From Macrostomum lignano (taxonomy: Eukaryota), in NCBI GenBank assembly GCA_002269645.1, contig NIVC01004846.1, forward strand, positions 1 to 33,538: a DNA stretch of 33,538 nt, read 5' to 3'. Made by a program: the position numbers and the translations under genes. Below are positions 8,122 to 33,538 of the stretch, in pieces (the stretch's first letter is position 1; each line of letters opens with the position of its first letter). Below the pieces are notes generated by a model. It did no database searches. It was not told where the DNA came from and was given only the letters and a program-made list of their open reading frames with translations.

Positions 8122-8624
8122 TGACAGAAGGCTGCGATGATGCTGTCAGCATGCTCTGTGTTGCATTTTGCTCACCCTTTAAACCAGTTTAAATATACAA
8201 ACGTTAGAAACTATTAACTACCAATAACAACACTAAAAAGCTGCACTTCAAAAGTTTTATAATAGTACTTGAACTTAATTTGCTTCCCGATATATATTGT
8301 AAACGTCATTCATAAACGCTTAAACAAACAGATCCGATACCTTATGTTACTTTAGTATAGAGCATGGCTGACAGGCTACGATTTACGTACTGTATAAAAT
8401 GCGTCTGCGCTTTACAGTGCAGAGCTGTAGAGACTGCAGTTGTGTAGTATGTAATAACTGAGTATGATGCAACATTGATTAGTAAACGGCCAGCACATGT
8501 AATTACAGTATACTATAAGTTGCAGTTTGATCAGCAGGCATCCAGCAACTCGTACAGGTCGGTAGGAGCGCCGCGATCAAGCCAGCATACAGGTTGGTAT
8601 AGCGCGATCCGCAACGCACATCGA

Positions 8625-8750
8625 TCACTTCTTCTTATGACCGCCCTTGGCAGCGGCCTGCTCGCCCTCGGCTTTTTCCGGCTGCTGCTTGGCGGCGTCC
8701 TTGTTGGCATCGGCGGCCTTCTTGTCGGCGGCGGCTTTCTTGGCAGGCAT
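8625..8750 (-). CDS. Micropeptide gene A, copy 1 (41 aa, MPAKKAAADKKAADANKDAAKQQPEKAEGEQAAAKGGHKKK)
   Basis: Start context ACAAAC-ATG, stop TGA, codon use skewed to GCC/AAG/CAG. Start, core and stop align with paralog B, and the inter-type indel is an in-frame 3 bp. Confidence 0.75.
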   Translation of the reverse strand: MPAKKAAADKKAADANKDAAKQQPEKAEGEQAAAKGGHKKK

Positions 8751-8786
8751 GTTTGTCTGTTGAGATTAGGAAGCTGATGCTTGAAG

Positions 8787-8793
8787 CTGCAAT
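8787..8793 (-). promoter_or_regulatory. Candidate 3' splice acceptor ATTGCAG, 36 nt upstream of gene A ATG (repeated in each unit)
   Basis: It follows a pyrimidine-rich run (CTGCTCGCTTCTCAAATTGCAG). The same heptamer sits at the equivalent position in gene B. Confidence 0.5.
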
Positions 8794-9473
8794 TTGAGAA
8801 GCGAGCAGCTGCGGTTTGCAAGGTGACCAACGTCAACTTCAAGTATAGCTAGCTGGCTGTACATCCTCATTAGAAAAACTATCTAGATATGTCCTAAAGG
8901 GCACTTCTTCTTATTTAACCGCTTATTGGAGCAGTGCAGCTCTACAAGGAACATTGGTGCATATCTAGCCTCTAGTTGGATGTGCTGGACAACGAAATCT
9001 AGAGGATGCTATATCAAGCCAAATGCAAGTAATGCCCCCTTTCTCTGTCTGCAACTGCTGATCTAACACAAAACATCCTAAGCATATAGGGAAACAGAGA
9101 GCATTTAAAGAACGAGAGCCGAAAACACCTGCTTGCTTTAAAAATACTGTCCAATATGTAATTAGGAAATGCTACTGTAATTATTCTACAATCAAACAAC
9201 TTTTTTCAAAGGATCAATTTACAACTATAAGCTTTCGTCAGCACGTGAGTAAGGTTAGTACAGTACAGAATACAGTAAGTAACCTAATTGCAGTTTCAGA
9301 GCTGGATGCAGCGACTCTTTAGCCCTAACAAAGACGATACGCTAATGCGGACAGATTATAGTATACTGTACAGGTATAGAGAGAGCTCAGAGTTCCACTC
9401 AGTCACGCCAATAGTAGGCCTGGCTGTCATGCGGTGCAGAGCACACCTAACAATTGATCTCTCTGAAATCGCA

Positions 9474-9614
9474 TCACTTCTTCTGACCGGCCTTGGCGGC
9501 AGCGCCACCAGCCTGCTGTTGTTGTTGCTGCTGCTTTTGCTGCTTGGCGTCCTTGTTGGCATCGGCTGCCTGCTGCTTGCCGGCTCCCTGCTGCTGGTTC
9601 TGCTTGGCTGGCAT
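9474..9614 (-). CDS. Micropeptide gene B, copy 1 (46 aa, MPAKQNQQQGAGKQQAADANKDAKQQKQQQQQQQAGGAAAKAGQKK)
   Basis: Start context CACAGA-ATG, stop TGA. It is a paralog of gene A. The ORF-track entry 9474..9677 extends it upstream only through a TTG start. Confidence 0.75.
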   Translation of the reverse strand: MPAKQNQQQGAGKQQAADANKDAKQQKQQQQQQQAGGAAAKAGQKK

Positions 9615-9652
9615 TCTGTGTTTTGCTTTTTGTGCTTGAAAGCTGCTTAGAG

Positions 9653-9659
9653 CTGCAAT
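9653..9659 (-). promoter_or_regulatory. Candidate 3' splice acceptor ATTGCAG, 38 nt upstream of gene B ATG (repeated in each unit)
   Basis: It follows TGACTTGCTTACTGTCGCCCCG. A possible donor GTGAGC at 9693 would give a 41-nt intron. Confidence 0.5.
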
Positions 9660-10501: not shown

Positions 10502-10627
10502 TCACTTCTTCTTATGACCGCCCTTGGCAGCGGCCTGCTCGCCCTCGGCTTTTTCCGGCTGCTGCTTGGCGGCGTCCTTGTTGGCATCGGCGGCCTTCTT
10601 GTCGGCGGCGGCTTTCTTGGCAGGCAT
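10502..10627 (-). CDS. Micropeptide gene A, copy 2 (type I, 41 aa)
   Basis: Same CDS as copy 1, shifted by 1877 bp. Confidence 0.72.
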   Translation of the reverse strand: MPAKKAAADKKAADANKDAAKQQPEKAEGEQAAAKGGHKKK

Positions 10628-11350: not shown

Positions 11351-11491
11351 TCACTTCTTCTGACCGGCCTTGGCGGCAGCGCCACCAGCCTGCTGTTGTT
11401 GTTGCTGCTGCTTTTGCTGCTTGGCGTCCTTGTTGGCATCGGCTGCCTGCTGCTTGCCGGCTCCCTGCTGCTGGTTCTGCTTGGCTGGCAT
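11351..11491 (-). CDS. Micropeptide gene B, copy 2
   Basis: Same 46-aa ORF as copy 1. Confidence 0.72.
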   Translation of the reverse strand: MPAKQNQQQGAGKQQAADANKDAKQQKQQQQQQQAGGAAAKAGQKK

Positions 11492-12378
11492 TCTGTGTTT
11501 TGCTTTTTGTGCTTGAAAGCTGCTTAGAGCTGCAATCGGGGCGACAGTAAGCAAGTCATATAGTGCTCACACAACAACAACACACACACAGCAGCGAACG
11601 AAGTCTGCGTGCATCTTAATCAAGTAGCTAGCTAGAATTTTTAAGTGCTACCAACCAGAGTATAACTTAGCTAAATACCAAAGGAATTTCACTCTTTCTA
11701 CTCATACAACTAATGATCGACGCTGGTTGCATTGATAAACCTGATGACCTGACCAGCTCGCAAGGGATGCCTAGAAATTATACATTTACGAGCCGTATAC
11801 TCCATTTCCACAGATTAGTCTACAAAAGCCCAGTAGCTAATTATTGCACTGCAAAATGTCTAACTCTTATACATAAACTGAAACAGCCCCACTGTCAGCC
11901 TGTGAGCGAGAGGCCCCTAAGCCTTGAGGAGCATGAAACTATATACGTGACTAGGAAGCAGCAAAAATATTGGTAAAAGTAGAGCTCAAGCCGAAAAACG
12001 ATTGTTGGTTGTTGCAACAACTTTGTAAGTAACTGATGCACCCAGTACAACAATGTAATTTACGACAAGTACATGACTGCCCGTCAGAACAGAGCAGCTG
12101 GTACCATAGTATAGAGCATGGCTGACAGGCTACGATTTACGTACTGTATAAAATGCGTCTGCGCTTTACAGTGCAGAGCTGTAGAGACTGCAGTTGTGTA
12201 GTATGTAATAACTGAGTATGATGCAACATTGATTAGTATCCGGCCAGCACATGTAATTACAATTCGCTATAAGTTGCAGTTTGATCAGCAGGCATCCAGC
12301 AACTCGTACAGGTCGGTAGGAGCGCCGCGATCAAGCCAGCATACAGGTTGGTATAGCGCGATCCGCAACGCACATCGA

Positions 12379-12504
12379 TCACTTCTTCTTATGACCGCCC
12401 TTGGCAGCGGCCTGCTCGCCCTCGGCTTTTTCCGGCTGCTGCTTGGCGGCGTCCTTGTTGGCATCGGCGGCCTTCTTGTCGGCGGCGGCTTTCTTGGCAG
12501 GCAT
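12379..12504 (-). CDS. Micropeptide gene A, copy 3 (type I)
   Basis: Same CDS as copy 1. Confidence 0.72.
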   Translation of the reverse strand: MPAKKAAADKKAADANKDAAKQQPEKAEGEQAAAKGGHKKK

Positions 12505-13227: not shown

Positions 13228-13368
13228 TCACTTCTTCTGACCGGCCTTGGCGGCAGCGCCACCAGCCTGCTGTTGTTGTTGCTGCTGCTTTTGCTGCTTG
13301 GCGTCCTTGTTGGCATCGGCTGCCTGCTGCTTGCCGGCTCCCTGCTGCTGGTTCTGCTTGGCTGGCAT
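13228..13368 (-). CDS. Micropeptide gene B, copy 3
   Basis: Same 46-aa ORF as copy 1. Confidence 0.72.
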   Translation of the reverse strand: MPAKQNQQQGAGKQQAADANKDAKQQKQQQQQQQAGGAAAKAGQKK

Positions 13369-14255
13369 TCTGTGTTTTGCTTTTTGTGCTTGAAAGCTGC
13401 TTAGAGCTGCAATCGGGGCGACAGTAAGCAAGTCATATAGTGCTCACACAACAACAACACACACACAGCAGCGAACGAAGTCTGCGTGCATCTTAATCAA
13501 GTAGCTAGCTAGAATTTTTAAGTGCTACCAACCAGAGTATAACTTAGCTAAATACCAAAGGAATTTCACTCTTTCTACTCATACAACTAATGATCGACGC
13601 TGGTTGCATTGATAAACCTGATGACCTGACCAGCTCGCAAGGGATGCCTAGAAATTATACATTTACGAGCCGTATACTCCATTTCCACAGATTAGTCTAC
13701 AAAAGCCCAGTAGCTAATTATTGCACTGCAAAATGTCTAACTCTTATACATAAACTGAAACAGCCCCACTGTCAGCCTGTGAGCGAGAGGCCCCTAAGCC
13801 TTGAGGAGCATGAAACTATATACGTGACTAGGAAGCAGCAAAAATATTGGTAAAAGTAGAGCTCAAGCCGAAAAACGATTGTTGGTTGTTGCAACAACTT
13901 TGTAAGTAACTGATGCACCCAGTACAACAATGTAATTTACGACAAGTACATGACTGCCCGTCAGAACAGAGCAGCTGGTACCATAGTATAGAGCATGGCT
14001 GACAGGCTACGATTTACGTACTGTATAAAATGCGTCTGCGCTTTACAGTGCAGAGCTGTAGAGACTGCAGTTGTGTAGTATGTAATAACTGAGTATGATG
14101 CAACATTGATTAGTATCCGGCCAGCACATGTAATTACAATTCGCTATAAGTTGCAGTTTGATCAGCAGGCATCCAGCAACTCGTACAGGTCGGTAGGAGC
14201 GCCGCGATCAAGCCAGCATACAGGTTGGTATAGCGCGATCCGCAACGCACATCGA

Positions 14256-14381
14256 TCACTTCTTCTTATGACCGCCCTTGGCAGCGGCCTGCTCGCCCTC
14301 GGCTTTTTCCGGCTGCTGCTTGGCGGCGTCCTTGTTGGCATCGGCGGCCTTCTTGTCGGCGGCGGCTTTCTTGGCAGGCAT
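14256..14381 (-). CDS. Micropeptide gene A, copy 4 (type I)
   Basis: Same CDS as copy 1. Confidence 0.72.
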   Translation of the reverse strand: MPAKKAAADKKAADANKDAAKQQPEKAEGEQAAAKGGHKKK

Positions 14382-15104: not shown

Positions 15105-15245
15105 TCACTTCTTCTGACCGGCCTTGGCGGCAGCGCCACCAGCCTGCTGTTGTTGTTGCTGCTGCTTTTGCTGCTTGGCGTCCTTGTTGGCATCGGCTGC
15201 CTGCTGCTTGCCGGCTCCCTGCTGCTGGTTCTGCTTGGCTGGCAT
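15105..15245 (-). CDS. Micropeptide gene B, copy 4
   Basis: Same 46-aa ORF as copy 1. Confidence 0.72.
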   Translation of the reverse strand: MPAKQNQQQGAGKQQAADANKDAKQQKQQQQQQQAGGAAAKAGQKK

Positions 15246-16132
15246 TCTGTGTTTTGCTTTTTGTGCTTGAAAGCTGCTTAGAGCTGCAATCGGGGCGACA
15301 GTAAGCAAGTCATATAGTGCTCACACAACAACAACACACACACAGCAGCGAACGAAGTCTGCGTGCATCTTAATCAAGTAGCTAGCTAGAATTTTTAAGT
15401 GCTACCAACCAGAGTATAACTTAGCTAAATACCAAAGGAATTTCACTCTTTCTACTCATACAACTAATGATCGACGCTGGTTGCATTGATAAACCTGATG
15501 ACCTGACCAGCTCGCAAGGGATGCCTAGAAATTATACATTTACGAGCCGTATACTCCATTTCCACAGATTAGTCTACAAAAGCCCAGTAGCTAATTATTG
15601 CACTGCAAAATGTCTAACTCTTATACATAAACTGAAACAGCCCCACTGTCAGCCTGTGAGCGAGAGGCCCCTAAGCCTTGAGGAGCATGAAACTATATAC
15701 GTGACTAGGAAGCAGCAAAAATATTGGTAAAAGTAGAGCTCAAGCCGAAAAACGATTGTTGGTTGTTGCAACAACTTTGTAAGTAACTGATGCACCCAGT
15801 ACAACAATGTAATTTACGACAAGTACATGACTGCCCGTCAGAACAGAGCAGCTGGTACCATAGTATAGAGCATGGCTGACAGGCTACGATTTACGTACTG
15901 TATAAAATGCGTCTGCGCTTTACAGTGCAGAGCTGTAGAGACTGCAGTTGTGTAGTATGTAATAACTGAGTATGATGCAACATTGATTAGTATCCGGCCA
16001 GCACATGTAATTACAATTCGCTATAAGTTGCAGTTTGATCAGCAGGCATCCAGCAACTCGTACAGGTCGGTAGGAGCGCCGCGATCAAGCCAGCATACAG
16101 GTTGGTATAGCGCGATCCGCAACGCACATCGA

Positions 16133-16258
16133 TCACTTCTTCTTATGACCGCCCTTGGCAGCGGCCTGCTCGCCCTCGGCTTTTTCCGGCTGCTGCTTGG
16201 CGGCGTCCTTGTTGGCATCGGCGGCCTTCTTGTCGGCGGCGGCTTTCTTGGCAGGCAT
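16133..16258 (-). CDS. Micropeptide gene A, copy 5 (type I)
   Basis: Same CDS as copy 1. Confidence 0.72.
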   Translation of the reverse strand: MPAKKAAADKKAADANKDAAKQQPEKAEGEQAAAKGGHKKK

Positions 16259-16981: not shown

Positions 16982-17122
16982 TCACTTCTTCTGACCGGCC
17001 TTGGCGGCAGCGCCACCAGCCTGCTGTTGTTGTTGCTGCTGCTTTTGCTGCTTGGCGTCCTTGTTGGCATCGGCTGCCTGCTGCTTGCCGGCTCCCTGCT
17101 GCTGGTTCTGCTTGGCTGGCAT
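16982..17122 (-). CDS. Micropeptide gene B, copy 5
   Basis: Same 46-aa ORF as copy 1. Confidence 0.72.
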   Translation of the reverse strand: MPAKQNQQQGAGKQQAADANKDAKQQKQQQQQQQAGGAAAKAGQKK

Positions 17123-18009
17123 TCTGTGTTTTGCTTTTTGTGCTTGAAAGCTGCTTAGAGCTGCAATCGGGGCGACAGTAAGCAAGTCATATAGTGCTCA
17201 CACAACAACAACACACACACAGCAGCGAACGAAGTCTGCGTGCATCTTAATCAAGTAGCTAGCTAGAATTTTTAAGTGCTACCAACCAGAGTATAACTTA
17301 GCTAAATACCAAAGGAATTTCACTCTTTCTACTCATACAACTAATGATCGACGCTGGTTGCATTGATAAACCTGATGACCTGACCAGCTCGCAAGGGATG
17401 CCTAGAAATTATACATTTACGAGCCGTATACTCCATTTCCACAGATTAGTCTACAAAAGCCCAGTAGCTAATTATTGCACTGCAAAATGTCTAACTCTTA
17501 TACATAAACTGAAACAGCCCCACTGTCAGCCTGTGAGCGAGAGGCCCCTAAGCCTTGAGGAGCATGAAACTATATACGTGACTAGGAAGCAGCAAAAATA
17601 TTGGTAAAAGTAGAGCTCAAGCCGAAAAACGATTGTTGGTTGTTGCAACAACTTTGTAAGTAACTGATGCACCCAGTACAACAATGTAATTTACGACAAG
17701 TACATGACTGCCCATCAGAACAGAGCAGATGGTACCATAGTATAGAGCATGGCTGACAGGCTACGATTTACGTACTGTATAAAATGCGTCTGCGCTTTAC
17801 AGTGCAGAGCTGTAGAGACTGCAGTTGTGTAGTATGTAATAACTGAGTATGATGCAACATTGATTAGTATCCGGCCAGCACATGTAATTACAATTCGCTA
17901 TAAGTTGCAGTTTGATCAGCAGGCATCCAGCAACTCGTACAGGTCGGTAGGAGCGCCGCGATCAAGCCAGCATACAGGTTGGTATAGCGCGATCCGCAAC
18001 GCACATCGA

Positions 18010-18135
18010 TCACTTCTTCTTATGACCGCCCTTGGCAGCGGCCTGCTCGCCCTCGGCTTTTTCCGGCTGCTGCTTGGCGGCGTCCTTGTTGGCATCGGCG
18101 GCCTTCTTGTCGGCGGCGGCTTTCTTGGCAGGCAT
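18010..18135 (-). CDS. Micropeptide gene A, copy 6 (type I)
   Basis: Same CDS as copy 1. Confidence 0.72.
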   Translation of the reverse strand: MPAKKAAADKKAADANKDAAKQQPEKAEGEQAAAKGGHKKK

Positions 18136-18858: not shown

Positions 18859-18999
18859 TCACTTCTTCTGACCGGCCTTGGCGGCAGCGCCACCAGCCTG
18901 CTGTTGTTGTTGCTGCTGCTTTTGCTGCTTGGCGTCCTTGTTGGCATCGGCTGCCTGCTGCTTGCCGGCTCCCTGCTGCTGGTTCTGCTTGGCTGGCAT
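18859..18999 (-). CDS. Micropeptide gene B, copy 6
   Basis: Same 46-aa ORF as copy 1. Confidence 0.72.
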   Translation of the reverse strand: MPAKQNQQQGAGKQQAADANKDAKQQKQQQQQQQAGGAAAKAGQKK

Positions 19000-19882
19000 T
19001 CTGTGTTTTGCTTTTTGTGCTTGAAAGCTGCTTAGAGCTGCAATCGGGGCGACAGTAAGCAAGTCATATAGTGCTCACACAACAACACACACACACAGCA
19101 GCGAACGAAGTCTGCGTGCATCTTAATCAAGTAGCTAGCTAGAATTTTTAAGTGCTACCAACCAGAGTATAACTTAGCTAAATACCAAAGGAATTTCACT
19201 CTTTCTACTCATACAACTAATGATCGACGCTGGTTGCATTGATAAACCTGATGACCTGACCAGCTCGCAAGGGATGCCTAGAAATTATACATTTACGAGC
19301 CGTATACTCCATTTCCACAGATTAGTCTACAAAAGCCCAGTAGCTAATTATTGCACTGCAAAATGTCTAACTCTTATACATAAACTGAAACAGCCCCACT
19401 GTCAGCCTGTGAGCGAGAGGCCCCTAAGCCTTGAGGAGCATGAAACTATATACGTGACTAGGAAGCAGCAAAAATATTGGTAAAAGTAGAGCTCAAGCCG
19501 AAAAACGATTGTTGGTTGTTGCAACAACTTTGTAAGTAACTGATGCACCCAGTACAACAATGTAATTTACGACAAGTACATGACTGCCCATCAGAACAGA
19601 GCAGATGGTACCATAGTATAGAGCATGGCTGACAGGCTACGATTTACGTACTGTATAAAATGCGTCTGCGCTTTACAGTGCAGAGCTGTAGAGACTGCAG
19701 TTGTGTAGTATGTAACTGAGTATGATGCAACATTGATTAGTATCCGGCCAGCACATGTAATTACAATTCGCTATAAGTTGCAGTTTGATCAGCAGGCATC
19801 CAGCAACTCGTACAGGTCGGTAGGAGCGCCGCGATCAAGCCAGCATACAGGTTGGTATAGCGCGATCCGCAACGCACATCGA

Positions 19883-20007
19883 TCACTTCTTCTTATGACC
19901 GCCCTTGGCAGCGGCCTGCTCGCCCTCGGCTTTTTCCGGCTGCTGCTTGGCGGCGTCCTTGTGGCATCGGCGGCCTTCTTGTCGGCGGCGGCTTTCTTGG
20001 CAGGCAT
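19883..20007 (-). pseudogene. Gene A, copy 7, 1-bp deletion frameshift (or consensus error)
   Basis: cttgtggcat replaces cttgttggcat, so the frame reads MPAKKAAADKKAADA and then shifts to TRTPP... Confidence 0.5.
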
Positions 20008-20730: not shown

Positions 20731-20871
20731 TCACTTCTTCTGACCGGCCTTGGCGGCAGCGCCACCAGCCTGCTGTTGTTGTTGCTGCTGCTTTTGCTGC
20801 TTGGCGTCCTTGTTGGCATCGGCTGCCTGCTGCTTGCCGGCTCCCTGCTGCTGGTTCTGCTTGGCTGGCAT
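20731..20871 (-). CDS. Micropeptide gene B, copy 7
   Basis: The CDS is intact. The 1-bp deletion in this unit lies upstream of the ATG. Confidence 0.7.
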   Translation of the reverse strand: MPAKQNQQQGAGKQQAADANKDAKQQKQQQQQQQAGGAAAKAGQKK

Positions 20872-21754
20872 TCTGTGTTTTGCTTTTTGTGCTTGAAGCT
20901 GCTTAGAGCTGCAATCGGGGCGACAGTAAGCAAGTCATATAGTGCTCACACAACAACAACACACACACAGCAGCGAACGAAGTCTGCGTGCATCTTAATC
21001 AAGTAGCTAGCTAGAATTTTTAAGTGCTACCAACCAGAGTATAACTTAGCTAAATACCAAAGGAATTTCACTCTTTCTACTCATACAACTAATGATCGAC
21101 GCTGGTTGCATTGATAAACCTGATGACCTGACCAGCTCGCAAGGGATGCCTAGAAATTATACATTTACGAGCCGTATACTCCATTTCCACAGATTAGTCT
21201 ACAAAAGCCCAGTAGCTAATTATTGCACTGCAAAATGTCTAACTCTTATACATAAACTGAAACAGCCCCACTGTCAGCCTGTGAGCGAGAGGCCCCTAAG
21301 CCTTGAGGAGCATGAAACTATATACGTGACTAGGAAGCAGCAAAAATATTGGTAAAAGTAGAGCTCAAGCCGAAAAACGATTGTTGGTTGTTGCAACAAC
21401 TTTGTAAGTAACTGATGCACCCAGTACAACAATGTAATTTACGACAAGTACATGACTGCCCATCAGAACAGAGCAGCTGGTACCATAGTATAGAGCATGG
21501 CTGACAGGCTACGATTTACGTACTGTATAAAATGCGTCTGCGCTTTACAGTGCAGAGCTGTAGAGACTGCAGTTGTGTAGTATGTAACTGAGTATGATGC
21601 AACATTGATTAGTAAACGGCCAGCACATGTAATTACAGTTCACTATAAGTTGCAGTTTGATCAGCAGGCATCCAGCAACTCGTACAGGTCGGTAGGAGCG
21701 CCGCGATCAAGCCAGCATACAGGTTGGTATAGCGCGATCCGCAACGCACATCGA

Positions 21755-21877
21755 TCACTTCTTCTTATGACCGCCCTTGGCAGCGGCCTGCTCGCCCTCG
21801 GCTTTTTCCGGCTGCTGCTTGGCGTCCTTGCTGGCATCGGCGGCCTTCTTGTCGGCGGCGGCTTTCTTGGCAGGCAT
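21755..21877 (-). CDS. Micropeptide gene A, copy 8 (type II, 40 aa, MPAKKAAADKKAADASKDAKQQPEKAEGEQAAAKGGHKKK)
   Basis: Carries an in-frame 3-bp difference and N-to-S relative to type I. Confidence 0.72.
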   Translation of the reverse strand: MPAKKAAADKKAADASKDAKQQPEKAEGEQAAAKGGHKKK

Positions 21878-22597: not shown

Positions 22598-22738
22598 TCA
22601 CTTCTTCTGACCGGCCTTGGCGGCAGCGCCACCAGCCTGCTGTTGTTGTTGCTGCTGCTTTTGCTGCTTGGCGTCCTTGTTGGCATCGGCTGCCTGCTGC
22701 TTGCCGGCTCCCTGCTGCTGGTTCTGCTTGGCTGGCAT
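22598..22738 (-). CDS. Micropeptide gene B, copy 8
   Basis: Same 46-aa ORF as copy 1. Confidence 0.72.
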   Translation of the reverse strand: MPAKQNQQQGAGKQQAADANKDAKQQKQQQQQQQAGGAAAKAGQKK

Positions 22739-23620
22739 TCTGTGTTTTGCTTTTTGTGCTTGAGAGCTGCTTAGAGCTGCAATCGGGGCGACAGTAAGCA
22801 AGTCATATAGTGCTCACACAACAACACACACACACAGCAGCGAACGAAGTCTGCGTGCATCTTAATCAAGTAGCTAGCTACAATTTTTAAGTGCTACCAA
22901 CCAGAGTATAACTTAGCTAAATACCAAAGGAATTTCACTCTTTCTACTCATACAACTAATGATCGACGCTGGTTGCATTGATAAACCTGATGACCTGACC
23001 AGCTCGCAAGGGATGCCTAGAAATTATACATTTACGAGCCGTACACTCCATTTCCACAGATTAGTCACAAAAGCCCAGTAGCTAGTTATTGCACTACAAA
23101 ATGTCTAACTCTTATACATAAACTGAAACAGCCCCACTGTCAGCCTGTGAGCGAGAGGCCCCTAAGCCTTGAGGAGCATGAAACTATATACGTGACTAGG
23201 AAGCAGCAAAAATATTGGTAAAAGTAGAGCTCAAGCCGAAAAACGATTGTTGGTTGTTGCAACAACTTTGTAAGTAACTGATGCACCCAGTACAACAATG
23301 TAATTTACGACAAGTACATGACTGCCCATCAGAACAGAGCAGCTGGTACCATAGTATAGAGCATGGCTGACAGGCTACGATTTACGTACTGTATAAAATG
23401 CGTCTGCGCTTTACAGTGCAGAGCTGTAGAGACTGCAGTTGTGTAGTATGTAACTGAGTATGATGCAACATTGATTAGTAAACGGCCAGCACATGTAATT
23501 ACAGTTCACTATAAGTTGCAGTTTGATCAGCAGGCATCCAGCAACTCGTACAGGTCGGTAGGAGCGCCGCGATCAAGCCAGCATACAGGTTGGTATAGCG
23601 CGATCCGCAACGCACATCGA

Positions 23621-23743
23621 TCACTTCTTCTTATGACCGCCCTTGGCAGCGGCCTGCTCGCCCTCGGCTTTTTCCGGCTGCTGCTTGGCGTCCTTGCTGG
23701 CATCGGCGGCCTTCTTGTCGGCGGCGGCTTTCTTGGCAGGCAT
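23621..23743 (-). CDS. Micropeptide gene A, copy 9 (type II)
   Basis: Same CDS as copy 8. Confidence 0.72.
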   Translation of the reverse strand: MPAKKAAADKKAADASKDAKQQPEKAEGEQAAAKGGHKKK

Positions 23744-24466: not shown

Positions 24467-24607
24467 TCACTTCTTCTGACCGGCCTTGGCGGCAGCGCCA
24501 CCAGCCTGCTGTTGTTGTTGCTGCTGCTTTTGCTGCTTGGCGTCCTTGTTGGCATCGGCTGCCTGCTGCTTGCCGGCTCCCTGCTGCTGGTTCTGCTTGG
24601 CTGGCAT
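24467..24607 (-). CDS. Micropeptide gene B, copy 9
   Basis: Same 46-aa ORF as copy 1. Confidence 0.72.
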   Translation of the reverse strand: MPAKQNQQQGAGKQQAADANKDAKQQKQQQQQQQAGGAAAKAGQKK

Positions 24608-25489
24608 TCTGTGTTTTGCTTTTTGTGCTTGAGAGCTGCTTAGAGCTGCAATCGGGGCGACAGTAAGCAAGTCATATAGTGCTCACACAACAACACACAC
24701 ACAGCAGCGAACGAAGTCTGTGTGCATCTTAATCAAGTAGCTAGCTACAATTTTTAAGTGCTACCAACCAGAGTATAACTTAGCTAACTACCAAAGGAAT
24801 TTCACTCTTTCTACTCATACAACTAATGATCGACGCTGGTTGCATTGATAAACCTGATAAACCTGACCAGCTCGCAAGGGATGCCTAGAAATTATACATT
24901 TACGAGCCGTACACTCCATTTCCACAGATTAGAACACAAAAGCCCAGTAGCTAGTTATTGCACTACAAAATGTCTAACTCTTATACATAAACTGAAACAG
25001 CCCCACTGTCAGCCTGTGAGCGAGAGGCCCCTAAGCCTTGAGGAGCATGAAACTATATACGTGACTAGGAAGCAGCAAAAATATTGGTAAAAGTAGAGCT
25101 CAAGCCGAAAAACGATTGTTGGTTGTTGCAACAACTTTGTAAGTAACTGATGCACCCAGTACAACAATGTAATTTACGACAAGTACATGACTGCCCATCA
25201 GAACAGAGCAGCTGGTACCATAGTATAGAGCATGGCTGACAGGCTACGATTTACGTACTGTATAAAATGCGTCTGCGCTTTACAGTGCAGAGCTGTAGAG
25301 ACTGCAGTTGTGTAGTATGTAACTGAGTATGATGCAACATTGATTAGTATCCGGCCAGCACATGTAATTACAATTCGCTATAAGTTGCAGTTTGATCAGC
25401 AGGCATCCAGCAACTCGTACAGGTCGGTAGGAGCGCCGCGATCAAGCCAGCATACAGGTTGGTATAGCGCGATCCGCAACGCACATCGA

Positions 25490-25612
25490 TCACTTCTTCT
25501 TATGACCGCCCTTGGCAGCGGCCTGCTCGCCCTCGGCTTTTTCCGGCTGCTGCTTGGCGTCCTTGCTGGCATCGGCGGCCTTCTTGTCGGCGGCGGCTTT
25601 CTTGGCAGGCAT
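25490..25612 (-). CDS. Micropeptide gene A, copy 10 (type II)
   Basis: Same CDS as copy 8. Confidence 0.72.
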   Translation of the reverse strand: MPAKKAAADKKAADASKDAKQQPEKAEGEQAAAKGGHKKK

Positions 25613-26336: not shown

Positions 26337-26477
26337 TCACTTCTTCTGACCGGCCTTGGCGGCAGCGCCACCAGCCTGCTGTTGTTGTTGCTGCTGCTTT
26401 TGCTGCTTGGCGTCCTTGTTGGCATCGGCTGCCTGCTGCTTGCCGGCTCCCTGCTGCTGGTTCTGCTTGGCTGGCAT
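26337..26477 (-). CDS. Micropeptide gene B, copy 10
   Basis: Same 46-aa ORF as copy 1. Confidence 0.72.
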   Translation of the reverse strand: MPAKQNQQQGAGKQQAADANKDAKQQKQQQQQQQAGGAAAKAGQKK

Positions 26478-27359
26478 TCTGTGTTTTGCTTTTTGTGCTT
26501 GAGAGCTGCTTAGAGCTGCAATCGGGGCGACAGTAAGCAAGTCATATAGTGCTCACACAACAACACACACACAGCAGCGAACGAAGTCTGTGTGCATCTT
26601 AATCAAGTAGCTAGCTACAATTTTTAAGTGCTACCAACCAGAGTATAACTTAGCTAACTACCAAAGGAATTTCACTCTTTCTACTCATACAACTAATGAT
26701 CGACGCTGGTTGCATTGATAAACCTGATAAACCTGACCAGCTCGCAAGGGATGCCTAGAAATTATACATTTACGAGCCGTACACTCCATTTCCACAGATT
26801 AGAACACAAAAGCCCAGTAGCTAGTTATTGCACTACAAAATGTCTAACTCTTATACATAAACTGAAACAGCCCCACTGTCAGCCTGTGAGCGAGAGGCCC
26901 CTAAGCCTTGAGGAGCATGAAACTATATACGTGACTAGGAAGCAGCAAAAATATTGGTAAAAGTAGAGCTCAAGCCGAAAAACGATTGTTGGTTGTTGCA
27001 ACAACTTTGTAAGTAACTGATGCACCCAGTACAACAATGTAATTTACGACAAGTACATGACTGCCCATCAGAACAGAGCAGCTGGTACCATAGTATAGAG
27101 CATGGCTGACAGGCTACGATTTACGTACTGTATAAAATGCGTCTGCGCTTTACAGTGCAGAGCTGTAGAGACTGCAGTTGTGTAGTATGTAACTGAGTAT
27201 GATGCAACATTGATTAGTATCCGGCCAGCACATGTAATTACAATTCGCTATAAGTTGCAGTTTGATCAGCAGGCATCCAGCAACTCGTACAGGTCGGTAG
27301 GAGCGCCGCGATCAAGCCAGCATACAGGTTGGTATAGCGCGATCCGCAACGCACATCGA

Positions 27360-27482
27360 TCACTTCTTCTTATGACCGCCCTTGGCAGCGGCCTGCTCGC
27401 CCTCGGCTTTTTCCGGCTGCTGCTTGGCGTCCTTGCTGGCATCGGCGGCCTTCTTGTCGGCGGCGGCTTTCTTGGCAGGCAT
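27360..27482 (-). CDS. Micropeptide gene A, copy 11 (type II)
   Basis: Same CDS as copy 8. Confidence 0.72.
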   Translation of the reverse strand: MPAKKAAADKKAADASKDAKQQPEKAEGEQAAAKGGHKKK

Positions 27483-28206: not shown

Positions 28207-28347
28207 TCACTTCTTCTGACCGGCCTTGGCGGCAGCGCCACCAGCCTGCTGTTGTTGTTGCTGCTGCTTTTGCTGCTTGGCGTCCTTGTTGGCATCGGCT
28301 GCCTGCTGCTTGCCGGCTCCCTGCTGCTGGTTCTGCTTGGCTGGCAT
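28207..28347 (-). CDS. Micropeptide gene B, copy 11
   Basis: Same 46-aa ORF as copy 1. Confidence 0.72.
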   Translation of the reverse strand: MPAKQNQQQGAGKQQAADANKDAKQQKQQQQQQQAGGAAAKAGQKK

Positions 28348-29229
28348 TCTGTGTTTTGCTTTTTGTGCTTGAGAGCTGCTTAGAGCTGCAATCGGGGCGA
28401 CAGTAAGCAAGTCATATAGTGCTCACACAACAACACACACACAGCAGCGAACGAAGTCTGTGTGCATCTTAATCAAGTAGCTAGCTACAATTTTTAAGTG
28501 CTACCAACCAGAGTATAACTTAGCTAACTACCAAAGGAATTTCACTCTTTCTACTCATACAACTAATGATCGACGCTGGTTGCATTGATAAACCTGATAA
28601 ACCTGACCAGCTCGCAAGGGATGCCTAGAAATTATACATTTACGAGCCGTACACTCCATTTCCACAGATTAGAACACAAAAGCCCAGTAGCTAGTTATTG
28701 CACTACAAAATGTCTAACTCTTATACATAAACTGAAACAGCCCCACTGTCAGCCTGTGAGCGAGAGGCCCCTAAGCCTTGAGGAGCATGAAACTATATAC
28801 GTGACTAGGAAGCAGCAAAAATATTGGTAAAAGTAGAGCTCAAGCCGAAAAACGATTGTTGGTTGTTGCAACAACTTTGTAAGTAACTGATGCACCCAGT
28901 ACAACAATGTAATTTACGACAAGTACATGACTGCCCATCAGAACAGAGCAGCTGGTACCATAGTATAGAGCATGGCTGACAGGCTACGATTTACGTACTG
29001 TATAAAATGCGTCTGCGCTTTACAGTGCAGAGCTGTAGAGACTGCAGTTGTGTAGTATGTAACTGAGTATGATGCAACATTGATTAGTATCCGGCCAGCA
29101 CATGTAATTACAATTCGCTATAAGTTGCAGTTTGATCAGCAGGCATCCAGCAACTCGTACAGGTCGGTAGGAGCGCCGCGATCAAGCCAGCATACAGGTT
29201 GGTATAGCGCGATCCGCAACGCACATCGA

Positions 29230-29352
29230 TCACTTCTTCTTATGACCGCCCTTGGCAGCGGCCTGCTCGCCCTCGGCTTTTTCCGGCTGCTGCTTGGCGT
29301 CCTTGCTGGCATCGGCGGCCTTCTTGTCGGCGGCGGCTTTCTTGGCAGGCAT
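29230..29352 (-). CDS. Micropeptide gene A, copy 12 (type II)
   Basis: Same CDS as copy 8. Confidence 0.72.
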   Translation of the reverse strand: MPAKKAAADKKAADASKDAKQQPEKAEGEQAAAKGGHKKK

Positions 29353-30081: not shown

Positions 30082-30222
30082 TCACTTCTTCTGACCGGCC
30101 TTGGCGGCAGCGCCACCAGCCTGCTGTTGTTGTTGCTGCTGCTTTTGCTGCTTGGCGTCCTTGTTGGCATCGGCTGCCTGCTGCTTGCCGGCTCCCTGCT
30201 GCTGGTTCTGCTTGGCTGGCAT
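30082..30222 (-). CDS. Micropeptide gene B, copy 12
   Basis: Same 46-aa ORF as copy 1, with a 5-bp atcgc duplication just past the stop. Confidence 0.72.
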   Translation of the reverse strand: MPAKQNQQQGAGKQQAADANKDAKQQKQQQQQQQAGGAAAKAGQKK

Positions 30223-31104
30223 TCTGTGTTTTGCTTTTTGTGCTTGAGAGCTGCTTAGAGCTGCAATCGGGGCGACAGTAAGCAAGTCATATAGTGCTCA
30301 CACAACAACACACACACAGCAGCGAACGAAGTCTGTGTGCATCTTAATCAAGTAGCTAGCTACAATTTTTAAGTGCTACCAACCAGAGTATAACTTAGCT
30401 AACTACCAAAGGAATTTCACTCTTTCTACTCATACAACTAATGATCGACGCTGGTTGCATTGATAAACCTGATAAACCTGACCAGCTCGCAAGGGATGCC
30501 TAGAAATTATACATTTACGAGCCGTACACTCCATTTCCACAGATTAGAACACAAAAGCCCAGTAGCTAGTTATTGCACTACAAAATGTCTAACTCTTATA
30601 CATAAACTGAAACAGCCCCACTGTCAGCCTGTGAGCGAGAGGCCCCTAAGCCTTGAGGAGCATGAAACTATATACGTGACTAGGAAGCAGCAAAAATATT
30701 GGTAAAAGTAGAGCTCAAGCCGAAAAACGATTGTTGGTTGTTGCAACAACTTTGTAAGTAACTGATGCACCCAGTACAACAATGTAATTTACGACAAGTA
30801 CATGACTGCCCATCAGAACAGAGCAGCTGGTACCATAGTATAGAGCATGGCTGACAGGCTACGATTTACGTACTGTATAAAATGCGTCTGCGCTTTACAG
30901 TGCAGAGCTGTAGAGACTGCAGTTGTGTAGTATGTAACTGAGTATGATGCAACATTGATTAGTATCCGGCCAGCACATGTAATTACAATTCGCTATAAGT
31001 TGCAGTTTGATCAGCAGGCATCCAGCAACTCGTACAGGTCGGTAGGAGCGCCGCGATCAAGCCAGCATACAGGTTGGTATAGCGCGATCCGCAACGCACA
31101 TCGA

Positions 31105-31227
31105 TCACTTCTTCTTATGACCGCCCTTGGCAGCGGCCTGCTCGCCCTCGGCTTTTTCCGGCTGCTGCTTGGCGTCCTTGCTGGCATCGGCGGCCTTCTT
31201 GTCGGCGGCGGCTTTCTTGGCAGGCAT
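31105..31227 (-). CDS. Micropeptide gene A, copy 13 (type II)
   Basis: Same CDS as copy 8. Confidence 0.72.
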   Translation of the reverse strand: MPAKKAAADKKAADASKDAKQQPEKAEGEQAAAKGGHKKK

Positions 31228-31956
31228 GTTTGTCTGTTGAGATTAGGAAGCTGATGCTTGGAGCTGCAATTTGAGAAGCGAGCAGCTGAGGTTTGCAACG
31301 TGACCAACGTCAACTTCAAGTATAGCTAGCTGGCTGTACATCCTCATTAGAAAAACTATCTAGATATATTCTCACGGGCACTTCTTCTTCTTTAACCGCT
31401 TATTGGAGCAGTGCAGCTCTACAAGGACCATTGGTGCATATCTAGCCTCTAGTTGGATGTGCTGGACAACGAAATCTAGAGGATGCTATATCAAGCCAAA
31501 TACAAGTAATGCCCCCTTTCTCTGTCTGCAACTGCTGATCTAACACAAAACATGCTAAGCATATAGGGAAACAGAGAGCATTTAAAGAACGAGAGCCGAA
31601 AACACCTGCTTGCTTTAAAAATACTGTCCAATATGTAATTTGGAAATGCTACTGTAATTATTCTACAATCAAACAACTTTTTTCAATGGATCAATTTACA
31701 ACTATAAGCTTTCGTCAGCACGTGAGTAAGGTTAGTACAGTACAGAATACAGTAAGTAACCTTGCAGTTTCAGAGCTGGGTGCTGCGACTCTTTAGCCCC
31801 AACAAAGACGATACGCTAATGCGGACAGATTATAGTATACTGTATGTACAGGTATAGAGATAGCTCAGAGTTCCACTCAGTCACGCCAATAGTAGGCCTG
31901 GCTGTCATGCGGTGCAGAGCACACCTAACAATTGATCTCTCTGAAATCGCATCGCA

Positions 31957-32097
31957 TCACTTCTTCTGACCGGCCTTGGCGGCAGCGCCACCAGCCTGCT
32001 GTTGTTGTTGCTGCTGCTTTTGCTGCTTGGCGTCCTTGTTGGCATCGGCTGCCTGCTGCTTGCCGGCTCCCTGCTGCTGGTTCTGCTTGGCTGGCAT
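31957..32097 (-). CDS. Micropeptide gene B, copy 13
   Basis: Same 46-aa ORF as copy 1, with the same 5-bp duplication as copy 12. Confidence 0.72.
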   Translation of the reverse strand: MPAKQNQQQGAGKQQAADANKDAKQQKQQQQQQQAGGAAAKAGQKK

Positions 32098-32975
32098 TCT
32101 GTGTTTTGCTTTTTGTGCTTGAGAGCTGCTTAGAGCTGCAATCGGGGCGACAGTAAGCAAGTCATATAGTGCTCACACAACAACACACACACAGCAGCGA
32201 ACGAAGTCTGTGCATCTTAATCAAGTAGCTAGCTACAATTTTTAAGTGCTACCAACCAGAGTATAACTTAGCTAACTACCAAAGGAATTTCACTCTTTCT
32301 ACTCATACAACTAATGATCGACGCTGGTTGCATTGATAAACCTGATACCTGACCAGCTCGCAAGGGATGCCTAGAAATTATACATTTACGAGCCGTACAC
32401 TCCATTTCCACAGATTAGAACACAAAAGCCCAGTAGCTAGTTATTGCACTACAAAATGTCTAACTCTTATACATAAACTGAAACAGCCCCACTGTCAGCC
32501 TGTGAGCGAGAGGCCCCTAAGCCTTGAGGAGCATGAAACTATATACGTGACTAGGAAGCAGCAAAAATATTGGTAAAAGTAGAGCTCAAGCCGAAAAACG
32601 ATTGTTGGTTGTTGCAACAACTTTGTAAGTAACTGATGCACCCAGTACAACAATGTAATTTACGACAAGTACATGACTGCCCATCAGAACAGAGCAGCTG
32701 GTACCATAGTATAGAGCATGGCTGACAGGCTACGATTTACGTACTGTATAAAATGCGTCTGCGCTTTACAGTGCAGAGCTGTAGAGACTGCAGTTGTGTA
32801 GTATGTAACTGAGTATGATGCAACATTGATTAGTAAACGGCCAGCACATGTAATTACAGTTCACTATAAGTTGCAGTTTGATCAGCAGGCATCCAGCAAC
32901 TCGTACAGGTCGGTAGGAGCGCCGCGATCAAGCCAGCATACAGGTTGGTATAGCGCGATCCGCAACGCACATCGA

Positions 32976-33097
32976 TCACTTCTTCTTATGACCGCCCTTG
33001 GCAGCGGCCTGCTCGCCTCGGCTTTTTCCGGCTGCTGCTTGGCGTCCTTGCTGGCATCGGCGGCCTTCTTGTCGGCGGCGGCTTTCTTGGCAGGCAT
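32976..33097 (-). pseudogene. Gene A, copy 14, frameshifted and lacking the upstream acceptor
   Basis: ctcgcctcgg replaces ctcgccctcgg (frameshift after PEKAE). The upstream ATTGCAG is changed to ATTGCTG (plus strand gagcagcaat, 33131-33140). Confidence 0.55.
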
Positions 33098-33538
33098 GTT
33101 TGTCTGTTGAGATTAGGAAGCTGATGCTTGGAGCAGCAATTTGAGAAGCGAGCAGCTGAGGTTTGCAACGTGACCAACGTCAACTTCAAGTATAGCTAGC
33201 TGGCTGTACATCCTCATTAGAAAAACTATCTAGATATATTCTCACGGGCACTTCTTCTTCTTTAACCGCTTATTGGAGCAGTGCAGCTCTACAAGGACCA
33301 TTGGTGCATATCTAGCCTCTAGTTGGATGTGCTGGACAACGAAATCTAGAGGATGCTATATCAAGCCAAATACAAGTAATGCCCCCTTTCTCTGTCTGCA
33401 ACTGCTGATCTAACACAAAACATGCTAAGCATATAGGGAAACAGAGAGCATTTAAAGAACGAGAGCCGAAAACACCTGCTTGCTTTAAAAATACTGTCCA
33501 ATATGTAATTTGGAAATGCTACTGTAATTATTCTACAA

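What the first reader, a model, noticed from the sequence alone, without database searches (positions are those of the whole stretch)
8353..33538. Amplified two-gene cassette encoding unrecognised 40-46-aa lysine/glutamine/alanine-rich micropeptides (27 gene copies)
Seen: each ~1.87-kb unit carries two short minus-strand ORFs that are below the 60-aa cut-off or hidden inside longer spurious ORFs. Both start MPAK and end KK-stop. They have good start contexts and strongly biased codons (GCC, AAG, CAG), and the variant indel is frame-preserving. Known: near-identical tandem gene arrays (histones, rDNA, chorion and eggshell genes) usually reflect demand for very high, brief output. Inference: this is a dosage-amplified, co-expressed peptide pair, possibly for gametes, secretory cells or stress. 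I do not recognise the family.
Basis: partly seen in the sequence, partly recalled or inferred. Interest (0 to 1): 0.85.

Follow-up and report, generated by a model that had tools for sequence, protein, structure and literature searches.

The report
Amplified flatworm micro-protein gene array
A flatworm (Macrostomum lignano) contig ends in a head-to-tail array of a 1.87-kb unit that carries two related, probably real genes for tiny, very basic and water-loving proteins of an unknown family, each preceded by a splice acceptor, so the array looks like a giant trans-spliced gene battery rather than a plain satellite.

Summary
Window 8353-33538 is a 1866-1877-bp tandem array. Its minus strand carries 13 identical copies of a 46-aa ORF (A) and 14 copies of a 40/41-aa ORF (B). 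Two B copies are frameshifted, probably by consensus errors.

The window is contig NIVC01004846.1 of the Macrostomum lignano Mlig_3_7 assembly. Two other contigs carry the upstream end of the same array (55 ORF copies in all), about 2.4 kb downstream of the TMA7 gene.

A and B are paralogues. Similarity between the two half-units is limited to a splice acceptor (ATTGCAG|), a 36-38-nt leader and the ORF. The MPAK ATG is the first ATG after the acceptor. ORF GC is 62-64% against 43% in spacers, and 73-80% of codons are M. lignano optimal codons, only in that frame.

Deposited RNA-seq-guided gene models splice into, or begin at, the A acceptor.

No homologue or family was found, and TMA7 homology was tested and not supported.

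Best reading: an operon-like, spliced-leader-processed battery of orphan hydrophilic micro-protein genes. Translation, expression level and function remain untested.

The parts
8353..33538 (-). Tandem array: 13 full units plus a partial unit, period 1866-1877 bp. It runs off the contig end. 8353 is the downstream end in the sense of the genes.
   Evidence: 65 variable columns out of 1887. Units fall into two variant blocks with a gradient.
9653..9659 (-). ATTGCAG splice acceptor of gene A (representative copy). The other copies are at 11530-11536, 13407-13413, 15284-15290, 17161-17167, 19038-19044, 20909-20915, 22777-22783, 24646-24652, 26516-26522, 28386-28392, 30261-30267 and 32136-32142.
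   Evidence: Matches the M. lignano spliced-leader acceptor motif [T/C]TNCAG (PMC8629364). The GenBank models P0002 and P0003 splice exactly here. Invariant in 13 of 13 copies.
9615..9652 (-). 38-nt 5' leader of gene A (representative). It contains no ATG. One T/C SNP and one 1-nt deletion occur among copies.
9474..9614 (-). ORF A copy 1 (46 aa)
11351..11491 (-). ORF A copy 2
13228..13368 (-). ORF A copy 3
15105..15245 (-). ORF A copy 4
16982..17122 (-). ORF A copy 5
18859..18999 (-). ORF A copy 6
20731..20871 (-). ORF A copy 7
22598..22738 (-). ORF A copy 8
24467..24607 (-). ORF A copy 9
26337..26477 (-). ORF A copy 10
28207..28347 (-). ORF A copy 11
30082..30222 (-). ORF A copy 12
31957..32097 (-). 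ORF A copy 13. The deposited annotation calls it as a 58-aa 5'-partial CDS, 31957-32133, starting at the third base after the acceptor.
8787..8793 (-). ATTGCAG splice acceptor of gene B (representative). The acceptor G of the other copies is at 10664, 12541, 14418, 16295, 18172, 20044, 21913, 23780, 25649, 27519, 29389 and 31264. The copy nearest the contig end (upstream of the ATG at 33097) reads ATTGCTG instead.
   Evidence: 13 of 14 copies are intact.
8751..8786 (-). 36-nt 5' leader of gene B (representative). It has no ATG and an in-frame TAA 5 codons upstream of the MPAK ATG.
8625..8750 (-). ORF B copy 1 (41 aa)
10502..10627 (-). ORF B copy 2 (41 aa)
12379..12504 (-). ORF B copy 3 (41 aa)
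14256..14381 (-). ORF B copy 4 (41 aa)
16133..16258 (-). ORF B copy 5 (41 aa)
18010..18135 (-). ORF B copy 6 (41 aa)
19789..20007 (-). ORF B copy 7, frameshifted (reads 72 aa). The missing base is exactly the A/G polymorphic base, at the junction between the two variant blocks.
21755..21877 (-). ORF B copy 8 (40 aa)
23621..23743 (-). ORF B copy 9 (40 aa)
25490..25612 (-). ORF B copy 10 (40 aa)
27360..27482 (-). ORF B copy 11 (40 aa)
29230..29352 (-). ORF B copy 12 (40 aa)
31105..31227 (-). ORF B copy 13 (40 aa)
32882..33097 (-). ORF B copy 14, frameshifted (GGG to GG, reads 71 aa). It is annotated in GenBank (P0001), its acceptor is also mutated, and it lies 441 nt from the contig end.
10266..10273 (-). 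Cryptic 5' splice site TATACA|GTACGTAA in the B-to-A spacer (representative; the GT is at 10267-10266). Equivalent GT positions: 8390-8389, 12144-12143, 14021-14020, 15898-15897, 17775-17774, 19651-19650, 21523-21522, 23389-23388, 25258-25257, 27128-27127, 28998-28997, 30873-30872 and 32744-32743.
   Evidence: The same site on contig NIVC01003793.1 is used by GenBank model PAA49765.1, with a 615-nt intron ending at the A acceptor.

Best explanation
The array is a head-to-tail battery of two alternating paralogous micro-protein genes of the flatworm Macrostomum lignano.

Each cistron is a single small exon. It has a TTGCAG splice acceptor, a 36-38-nt leader without an AUG, an MPAK-initiated ORF of 40-46 codons, and a stop after KK(K).

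The most likely mode of expression is as follows. RNA polymerase II reads through many units on the minus strand, entering from the upstream TMA7-containing region and/or from promoters inside the spacers. The precursor is then cut into monocistronic mRNAs by addition of the 35-nt spliced leader at each acceptor. When an upstream 5' splice site is available, cis-splicing competes with this and produces the chimeric isoforms seen in GenBank.

The products are 4.2- and 4.8-kDa proteins. They are strongly basic (pI about 10) and extremely hydrophilic, have no hydrophobic core, and are helix-prone or disordered.

As the most likely function I propose abundant cytosolic or nuclear polyanion-binding (RNA or ribosome) or protective 'hydrophilin-type' micro-proteins, with output scaled by copy number.

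Shown here: the array, the paralogy, the conserved acceptor and leader, the coding-like composition, and use of the A acceptor in deposited transcript-based models.

Inferred, not shown: spliced-leader addition, polycistronic transcription, translation, abundance and function.
For: Identity of the window: M. lignano Mlig_3_7 contig NIVC01004846.1.

Paralogy: blastn between the two half-units finds one significant match, 69% over 188 nt, E 2e-14. It starts at ATTGCAG and ends at the stop codon. The 3' spacers are unrelated. The repeat finder recovers the same two blocks independently. The protein alignment of A and B scores 82-90 against 22-44 for shuffles, p<2e-4.

Frame: four length differences between conserved blocks (12, 3, 9 and 3 nt), and the polymorphic indel, are all multiples of three.

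Acceptor: TTGCAG fits the published M. lignano trans-splice acceptor motif [T/C]TNCAG, and same-strand genes less than 1 kb apart fit the operon criterion (PMC8629364). The acceptor is intact in 13/13 A and 13/14 B copies, and the leaders contain no ATG.

Transcript evidence: GenBank models PAA49765.1 and PAA92363.1 splice from GT donors exactly onto ATTGCAG|CTCTAAGC. Two further models have a CDS starting at the third base after the acceptor. That is what is expected if the transcript 5' end was set at a trans-splice site by the TBONE pipeline. Models in that annotation required RNA-seq support (PMC5730564).

Coding signal: ORF GC is 62-64% against 43% in spacers. Optimal codons are 33/45 (A) and 32/40 (B) in the MPAK frame, the best of six frames. 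The maximum in spacer windows is 0.45 (optimal codons taken from the codon-optimised reporters).

Conservation: all 28 A copies on three contigs are identical, although units differ by up to 59 columns.

Product properties: pI 9.8-10.2, GRAVY -1.5 to -1.8, no aliphatic or aromatic residues. AlphaFold2 on B alone predicts two helices with pLDDT 71.
Against: No RNA-seq, spliced-leader read, 3'-end, Ribo-seq or proteomic data could be examined here. Transcript evidence is second-hand, through deposited gene models, and multi-mapping in a repeat can create artefactual models.

No homologue was found outside M. lignano, so frame conservation across species is untested.

Variation among units is not significantly lower in the ORFs than in the spacers. 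The A-versus-B differences are not concentrated at third codon positions.

The ORFs are triplet-biased low-complexity sequence, open in several frames, so indels that are multiples of three could come from slippage.

Two of the 14 B copies are frameshifted.

No AATAAA-type poly(A) signal lies in either spacer, whereas the neighbouring TMA7 gene and the EFA 3'UTR have one.

Fifteen of 25 units are 100% identical. The expansion is therefore very recent and need not be adaptive. Tandem and simple repeats make up 15% of this genome.
Confidence: 0.6

Rival explanations
1. The array is a 1.87-kb satellite-like tandem repeat, of a kind common in this genome. It happens to be transcribed by read-through, and its ORFs are not translated into functional products.
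For: Simple and tandem repeats make up 15% of the M. lignano genome. Fifteen of 25 units are identical, which indicates very recent expansion. There is no excess constraint on the ORFs among units. Two B copies are frameshifted. No homologues exist in any database searched. No canonical poly(A) signal is present. The ORF sequence is low-complexity and open in several frames.
Against: The two half-units have diverged beyond recognition everywhere except acceptor, leader and ORF. That pattern needs selection on that segment, or a recent local conversion. The high optimal-codon fraction and GC3 are specific to the MPAK frame. The first-AUG arrangement behind a conserved acceptor is present in both paralogues. 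Both frameshifts look like consensus errors: one sits at the polymorphic base at a block boundary, the other is in a GGG run 441 nt from the contig end.
Confidence: 0.2
2. The micro-ORFs are only the last exons of longer proteins, as in the GenBank models of 87, 100 and 153 aa. The real products would then be larger spliced proteins.
For: The deposited models join upstream exons in frame to the A exon.
Against: The three models have three different, unrelated N-terminal parts: a 29-aa stretch from the B 3' spacer, an exon from the upstream flank, and a model spanning five units. This is typical of longest-ORF calling on read-through isoforms. The in-frame extension of A exists only because its leader has no stop codon. 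B has an in-frame TAA in its leader. No good 5' splice site lies inside either ORF before its stop codon (sequence).
Confidence: 0.07
3. A and B are highly diverged duplicates of the neighbouring TMA7 gene and act, like TMA7, as ribosome-associated factors. This is a hypothesis about origin and function, and it is compatible with the array being a gene battery.
For: The M. lignano TMA7 gene (PF09072, E 4.9e-20) lies about 2.4 kb upstream of the array start on the same strand. The first A gene is named as gene 3 of transcriptional unit Mlig001540. A, B and TMA7 have the same general build: a single small exon behind a YTNCAG acceptor, Lys-rich, basic, no hydrophobic core, ending in G-x-K-K.
Against: Pfam TMA7 does not match A or B even at E<=10. 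BLASTP gives E 1.7 and 19. The shuffle test gives p 0.4 and 0.6 for local alignment and 0.05 and 0.17 for global. hhalign probability is 1%. There is no DNA similarity.
Confidence: 0.1
4. The conserved segment works as RNA, either as a structured or regulatory non-coding RNA or as a splicing decoy, and not as a coding sequence.
For: Conservation covers the untranslated leader as well as the ORF.
Against: No Rfam family matches at gathering score or at E<=1, and there is no tRNA. The codon-frame-specific composition and the conserved start and stop in one frame are not explained by an RNA function.
Confidence: 0.03

Closest known systems
Spliced-leader trans-spliced operons of Macrostomum lignano (Ustyantsev and Berezikov 2021, PMC8629364; transcriptional units of Wudarski et al. 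2017, PMC5730564)
   Same: Genes lie on one strand. Each is preceded by a [T/C]TNCAG acceptor at the 5' end of its first exon. Spacing is under 1 kb. The first A gene is annotated as gene 3 of a multi-gene transcriptional unit.
   Different: Published operons hold 2-9 different genes. This array has at least 27 cistrons in the window (55 on three contigs) of only two alternating paralogues, in near-identical repeats. Spliced-leader reads at these acceptors were not seen here. Spacers of 680-840 nt are long compared with the roughly 100-bp mode.
TMA7, translation machinery-associated protein 7 (Pfam PF09072)
   Same: A small, Lys-rich, basic, hydrophilic single-exon protein ending in G-x-K-K. 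The M. lignano TMA7 gene is the nearest recognisable upstream neighbour on the same strand.
   Different: No detectable sequence or profile similarity. A and B have 41-46 aa against 64 for TMA7. They lack the invariant GGKxKPLK and EDxAFK motifs.
Hydrophilins and small LEA-like proteins. This is a physico-chemical class; the criteria of Garay-Arroyo et al. 2000 are recalled from my own knowledge.
   Same: Gly is above 6% (7.3% and 10.9%) and the mean hydropathy is below -1 (GRAVY -1.47 and -1.81). The composition is rich in Ala, Lys, Asp, Glu and Gln. The peptides are helix-prone or disordered.
   Different: No Pfam LEA, KGG or CsbD match. The peptides are much shorter than typical LEA proteins. 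Induction by water deficit or any protective activity is untested.
Tandemly amplified small-protein gene arrays: yeast CUP1 (2-kb unit with two ORFs), winter-flounder type I antifreeze genes, histone repeats, and the trans-spliced tandem arrays of trypanosomatids and dinoflagellates (own knowledge)
   Same: Near-identical head-to-tail units of about 2 kb, each carrying one or two small genes, with copy number as a plausible dosage lever. In the protist cases, polycistronic transcription is resolved by spliced-leader addition.
   Different: The protein family is unrelated. No selective agent is known. It has not been shown that copy number varies or matters. A test for spliced-leader relics upstream of the acceptors, as seen in dinoflagellates, was not significant.

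Membership tests
M. lignano spliced-leader trans-spliced operon | Adjacent genes in the same transcriptional orientation, not interrupted by opposite-strand genes | tested here: met
   All 27 ORFs are on the minus strand and alternate A and B.
M. lignano spliced-leader trans-spliced operon | [quoted passage not shown] | tested here: met
   ATTGCAG lies 36-38 nt upstream of the first ATG in 13/13 A and 13/14 B copies. The motif is from PMC8629364.
M. lignano spliced-leader trans-spliced operon | Intergenic distance below 1 kb | tested here: met
   Stop-to-next-acceptor distance is 680 nt (A to B) and 842 nt (B to A). True distances are shorter, by the unknown 3'UTR lengths.
M. lignano spliced-leader trans-spliced operon | RNA-seq reads that carry the 35-nt spliced leader joined at the acceptor | not testable with these tools
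   Only indirect evidence. Two deposited CDS start at exon base 3. Two models cis-splice onto the same acceptor.
TMA7 (PF09072) | Match to the Pfam TMA7 profile at or above the gathering score (27 bits) | tested here: not met
   No hit for A or B at E<=10. The neighbouring true TMA7 scores 72.5 bits. hhalign probability is 1%.
Hydrophilins | Gly above 6% and hydrophilicity index above 1 | tested here: met
   A: 5/46 Gly, GRAVY -1.81. B: 3/41 Gly, GRAVY -1.47. The criteria are recalled from the literature, not from a tool.
Hydrophilins | Accumulation under water deficit, and protection of enzymes in vitro | not testable with these tools
   No expression or biochemical data were available.
Non-coding satellite DNA | Long head-to-tail array of near-identical units | tested here: met
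Non-coding satellite DNA | No segment under coding or functional constraint | tested here: not met
   Paralogue similarity is confined to acceptor, leader and ORF. The codon bias is frame-specific. The among-unit variation test alone was inconclusive.
Known RNA gene arrays (5S rRNA, spliced-leader RNA, snRNA, tRNA) | Match to an Rfam or tRNA model | tested here: not met

The most novel reading that the evidence does not exclude
The locus is the largest spliced-leader-resolved polycistron described in an animal, with dozens of cistrons and a total length not yet assembled. It encodes a genus-restricted, recently born pair of micro-proteins that arose beside TMA7, possibly from it. These micro-proteins would be among the most abundant small proteins of the worm, acting on ribosomes or RNA or as stress protectants, with array copy number as a fast-evolving dosage control.
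Probability: 0.12. Interest if true: 0.75.

Novelty: new variant of a known kind. Interest (0 to 1): 0.5.

Why it matters
If the peptides are made, this is a new, taxonomically restricted micro-protein family that standard annotation misses or mis-extends. Intact B is absent from GenBank, and A is present only with artefactual N-termini.

It sits in a genetically tractable flatworm where RNAi, in situ hybridisation and transgenesis are routine.

It would also be an unusually clear case of a homogeneous tandem array that depends on spliced-leader trans-splicing. That links two open questions in M. lignano genomics: what trans-splicing is for outside classical operons, and whether part of the 15% tandem-repeat fraction is actually genic.

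If the peptides are not made, the locus is a cautionary example of a transcribed satellite that generates plausible gene models.

Tried and rejected
(1) Spliced-leader relic idea: that the sequence upstream of the acceptors derives from a retroposed leader. Local alignment of the 35-nt leader to the 70 nt upstream gave p 0.19 (A) and 0.07 (B) against shuffles, and similar ranks among other YTNCAG sites. Dropped.

(2) TMA7 homology: rejected as unsupported.

(3) Database homology. The word-indexed searches with B, A and leader+A returned only M. lignano's own models. The exhaustive phmmer search of 1.84 billion representatives with A gave only P0002 and P0003. PDB gave no hit. Pfam gave no hit.

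(4) Exact-product look-ups, to find RNA-seq or other assemblies carrying the ORFs or the longer overlapping ORFs: none on record.

(5) Metagenome scan with the conserved 21-mer: 32 hits, all GC-rich unrelated contigs.

(6) Literature. Gene IDs, accessions and peptide strings were not found in any held paper or in the supplements checked.

(7) Constraint test on among-unit variation: no power and no contrast.

(8) Codon-position test on A-versus-B differences: not informative, because the central part cannot be aligned.

(9) Transposon-like structure: no terminal or inverted repeats in the unit.

(10) RNA genes: none.

(11) tblastn of A and B against the three flanks: only weak low-complexity hits. 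One of these led to the TMA7 gene.

Full report
**Observation**

- Anchors for the two ORFs occur 14 times (B) and 13 times (A) on the minus strand, at a spacing of 1866-1877 nt.
- Similarity to the unit stops at base 8353 (sequence), and the array runs off the contig end at 33538.
- All 13 A copies encode the identical 46-aa peptide.
- Of the B copies, 6 give 41 aa and 6 give 40 aa (N16S plus an in-frame GCC deletion).
- The 13 full units differ at 65 of 1887 aligned columns. They form two variant blocks with a gradient, as expected for local homogenisation.

**Source**

An exact-product look-up places the window as the whole of contig NIVC01004846.1 of assembly GCA_002269645.1. The accession series NIVC00000000 is the Macrostomum lignano Mlig_3_7 assembly (PMC5730564).

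This free-living flatworm has several relevant properties:
- Widespread spliced-leader (SL) trans-splicing.
- Polycistronic transcriptional units.
- A genome with 15% simple and tandem repeats.
- A duplicated large chromosome in the sequenced DV1 line.

**Anatomy of the unit**

On the minus strand each unit reads: B exon, 842-nt spacer, A exon, 680-nt spacer.
- A blastn comparison of the two half-units finds a single significant match: 69% over 188 nt, E 2e-14. It begins at ATTGCAG and ends at the stop codon.
- The 3' spacers share nothing.
- The repeat finder independently picks out the ORF core (52 nt, 77%) and the acceptor/leader start (16 nt, 88%) as the only notable internal repeats. It finds no transposon-like terminal repeats.
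- At protein level A and B align with conserved MPAK, AADA(N/S)KDA, KQQ, AAAK and G-x-KK blocks. The alignment score exceeds every one of 5000 composition-preserving shuffles (z about 7).

A and B are therefore old paralogues. Only the acceptor, the short leader and the ORF have been kept.

**Coding-like features**
- The MPAK ATG is the first ATG after the acceptor in every copy of both genes, with A at position -3.
- The four length differences between conserved blocks (12, 3, 9 and 3 nt), and the polymorphic indel, are all multiples of three. This is weakened by the triplet-like nature of the sequence.
- ORF GC is 62-64%, with GC3 0.74-0.80, against 43% in the spacers.
- The fraction of codons that are M. 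lignano 'optimal' codons was read from the reporters that Wudarski et al. optimised on the 100 most expressed genes. It is 33/45 for A and 32/40 for B in the MPAK frame.
- That frame is the best of the six for both ORFs, and it lies above the maximum of 0.45 seen in any spacer window.

**Second-hand transcript evidence**

The exhaustive protein search with A found only two proteins, both from M. lignano's deposited annotation:
- PAA49765.1 (BOX15_Mlig030344g1, 87 aa, contig NIVC01003793.1).
- PAA92363.1 (BOX15_Mlig001540g3, partial, 100 aa, contig NIVC01000056.1).

I reconstructed both models on the DNA.
- The first joins an exon in the B-to-A spacer, through the donor TATACA|GTACGTAA and a 615-nt intron, to CCCCGATTGCAG|CTCTAAGC.
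- The second joins an exon in the upstream flank (donor AGCCAT|GTAAGTCG) to the same acceptor.

Two further models have a CDS that starts at the third base after the acceptor. One is in the window (31957-32133) and one is on NIVC01000056.1. This is what one expects if the annotated mRNA 5' end was set at a trans-splice site by the authors' TBONE pipeline.

TTGCAG fits the published M. lignano SL acceptor motif [T/C]TNCAG, and the spacing fits the published operon criterion of less than 1 kb. That annotation kept only transcripts with RNA-seq support.

I did not see any reads. SL addition, polycistronic transcription and expression level are therefore inferences.

**The wider locus**

The other two contigs carry the upstream end of the array.
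- It starts about 330 nt before a first A gene and again runs to the contig end. One contig has 3 A and 2 B copies, the other 12 A and 11 B.
- Their flanks are 99.9% identical over 4.1 kb. This is consistent with the duplicated chromosome of DV1.
- Fifteen of the 25 full units on the three contigs are 100% identical.
- All 28 A copies are identical. B is 19 copies of 41 aa, 6 of 40 aa and 2 frameshifted.
- All three arrays end at contig ends, so the true copy number is higher than assembled.
- About 2.4 kb upstream of the array start, on the same strand, lies the M. lignano TMA7 gene: 64 aa, PF09072 E 4.9e-20, its own TTTGCAG acceptor, and an AATAAA signal.

**The frameshifts**
- In the copy with ATG at 20007, the missing base is exactly the A/G polymorphic base. 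The copy sits at the junction of the two variant blocks.
- In the copy with ATG at 33097, one G of a GGG run is missing. The acceptor also reads ATTGCTG, and the copy lies 441 nt from the contig end.

Both look like long-read consensus errors. This is not proven.

**Products**
- A is 4.8 kDa with pI 10.2. B is 4.2 kDa with pI 9.8.
- GRAVY is -1.8 (A) and -1.5 (B).
- Neither has an aliphatic, aromatic or Cys residue, and neither has a signal-peptide-like segment.
- AlphaFold2 on B alone predicts two helices broken at Pro24, with moderate confidence (pLDDT 71).
- Both meet the physico-chemical definition of hydrophilins (own knowledge of the criteria).

**Family searches**
- No Pfam, PDB or Rfam match.
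- Because of the neighbour, I tested TMA7 homology explicitly. All tests were negative: Pfam no hit, BLASTP E 1.7 and 19, shuffle p 0.05-0.6, hhalign probability 1%, no DNA similarity.
They aligned well to the tool-derived M. lignano TMA7.

**Mechanism proposed**

This is an operon-like battery. Long minus-strand precursors are resolved by SL addition at each TTGCAG acceptor. Competing cis-splicing occurs wherever an upstream donor exists. The result is many identical small mRNAs for two paralogous basic hydrophilic micro-proteins, and copy number sets the dosage.

For function I lean towards polyanion (RNA or ribosome) binding or hydrophilin-type protection. Confidence in either specific function is low.

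**Rivals**
- A transcribed but non-functional satellite (0.2).
- Longer spliced proteins, as annotated in GenBank (0.07).
- Diverged TMA7 duplicates (0.1; compatible with the main reading).
- An RNA function (0.03).

**Weak points of the coding reading**
- There is no cross-species comparison.
- There is no excess constraint among units.
- There is no third-position bias in the A-versus-B differences.
- There is no canonical poly(A) signal in the spacers.
- The expansion is very recent.

**Verdict**

The finding is real and more structured than a satellite, and it is only partly captured by existing annotation. I score interest 0.5 and classify it as a new variant of a known kind: a trans-spliced, tandemly amplified gene array that encodes an orphan micro-protein family.

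Noticed in passing
L003:9185-9379 (+), contig NIVC01000056.1; the same gene is in L002 at about 6090-6284: The M. lignano TMA7 orthologue (64 aa, PF09072 E 4.9e-20). It has a TTTGCAG acceptor 23 nt upstream of its ATG and AATAAA about 60 nt after its stop. It lies about 2.4 kb upstream of the array start, on the same strand.
   Followed up: yes
window 3224-3892, 4496-5119, 5677-5941, 6457-7010: Four minisatellites (periods 30, 29, 29 and 24 bp; about 6-23 copies) in the GC-rich left flank. The 24-bp one lies inside a long plus-strand ORF (5935-6915) and would encode about 20 LMDDGILG repeats.
   Followed up: no
window 7121-7648 (+), with other plus-strand ORFs at 3970-8121: A leucine-rich-repeat-like ORF (LRR_6 E 0.019, below the Pfam cut-off). 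It is probably an exon of a plus-strand gene that converges on the array end, about 230 nt from 8353.
   Followed up: partly
window 1303-1959 and 653-781: A 328-bp direct duplication (2 copies, 99%) and a 41-bp repeat (3.2 copies) in the AT-rich (about 30% GC) left end of the contig.
   Followed up: no
window 33134-33140 (upstream of the B ATG at 33097): The B copy nearest the contig end has ATTGCTG instead of ATTGCAG, as well as the GGG-to-GG frameshift. That is two defects within 150 nt, 441 nt from the contig end, which suggests poor consensus quality there rather than a decayed copy.
   Followed up: partly
L003:17552-27111 (+): A deposited 153-aa gene model starts at the third base after one A acceptor and ends at the stop codon of the A copy five units downstream. 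It is probably an assembly or mapping artefact in the repeat. I could not retrieve its sequence.
   Followed up: partly
L003:10001-10124 and L003:10840-11055 (+): Two features lie between TMA7 and the array. One is an exon with a GTAAGT donor that is spliced onto the A acceptor in PAA92363.1; it may be a non-coding first exon or a promoter-proximal exon for the array. The other is an unannotated 71-aa Lys/Ser/Thr/Ala-rich ORF with no Pfam match.
   Followed up: partly
L002:4446-8600 versus L003:7541-11695: The upstream flanks of the array on two contigs are 99.88% identical over 4155 bp. These are haplotig or duplicated-chromosome copies of one locus. Further upstream the identity drops to 88-93%, with an inversion.
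   Followed up: partly
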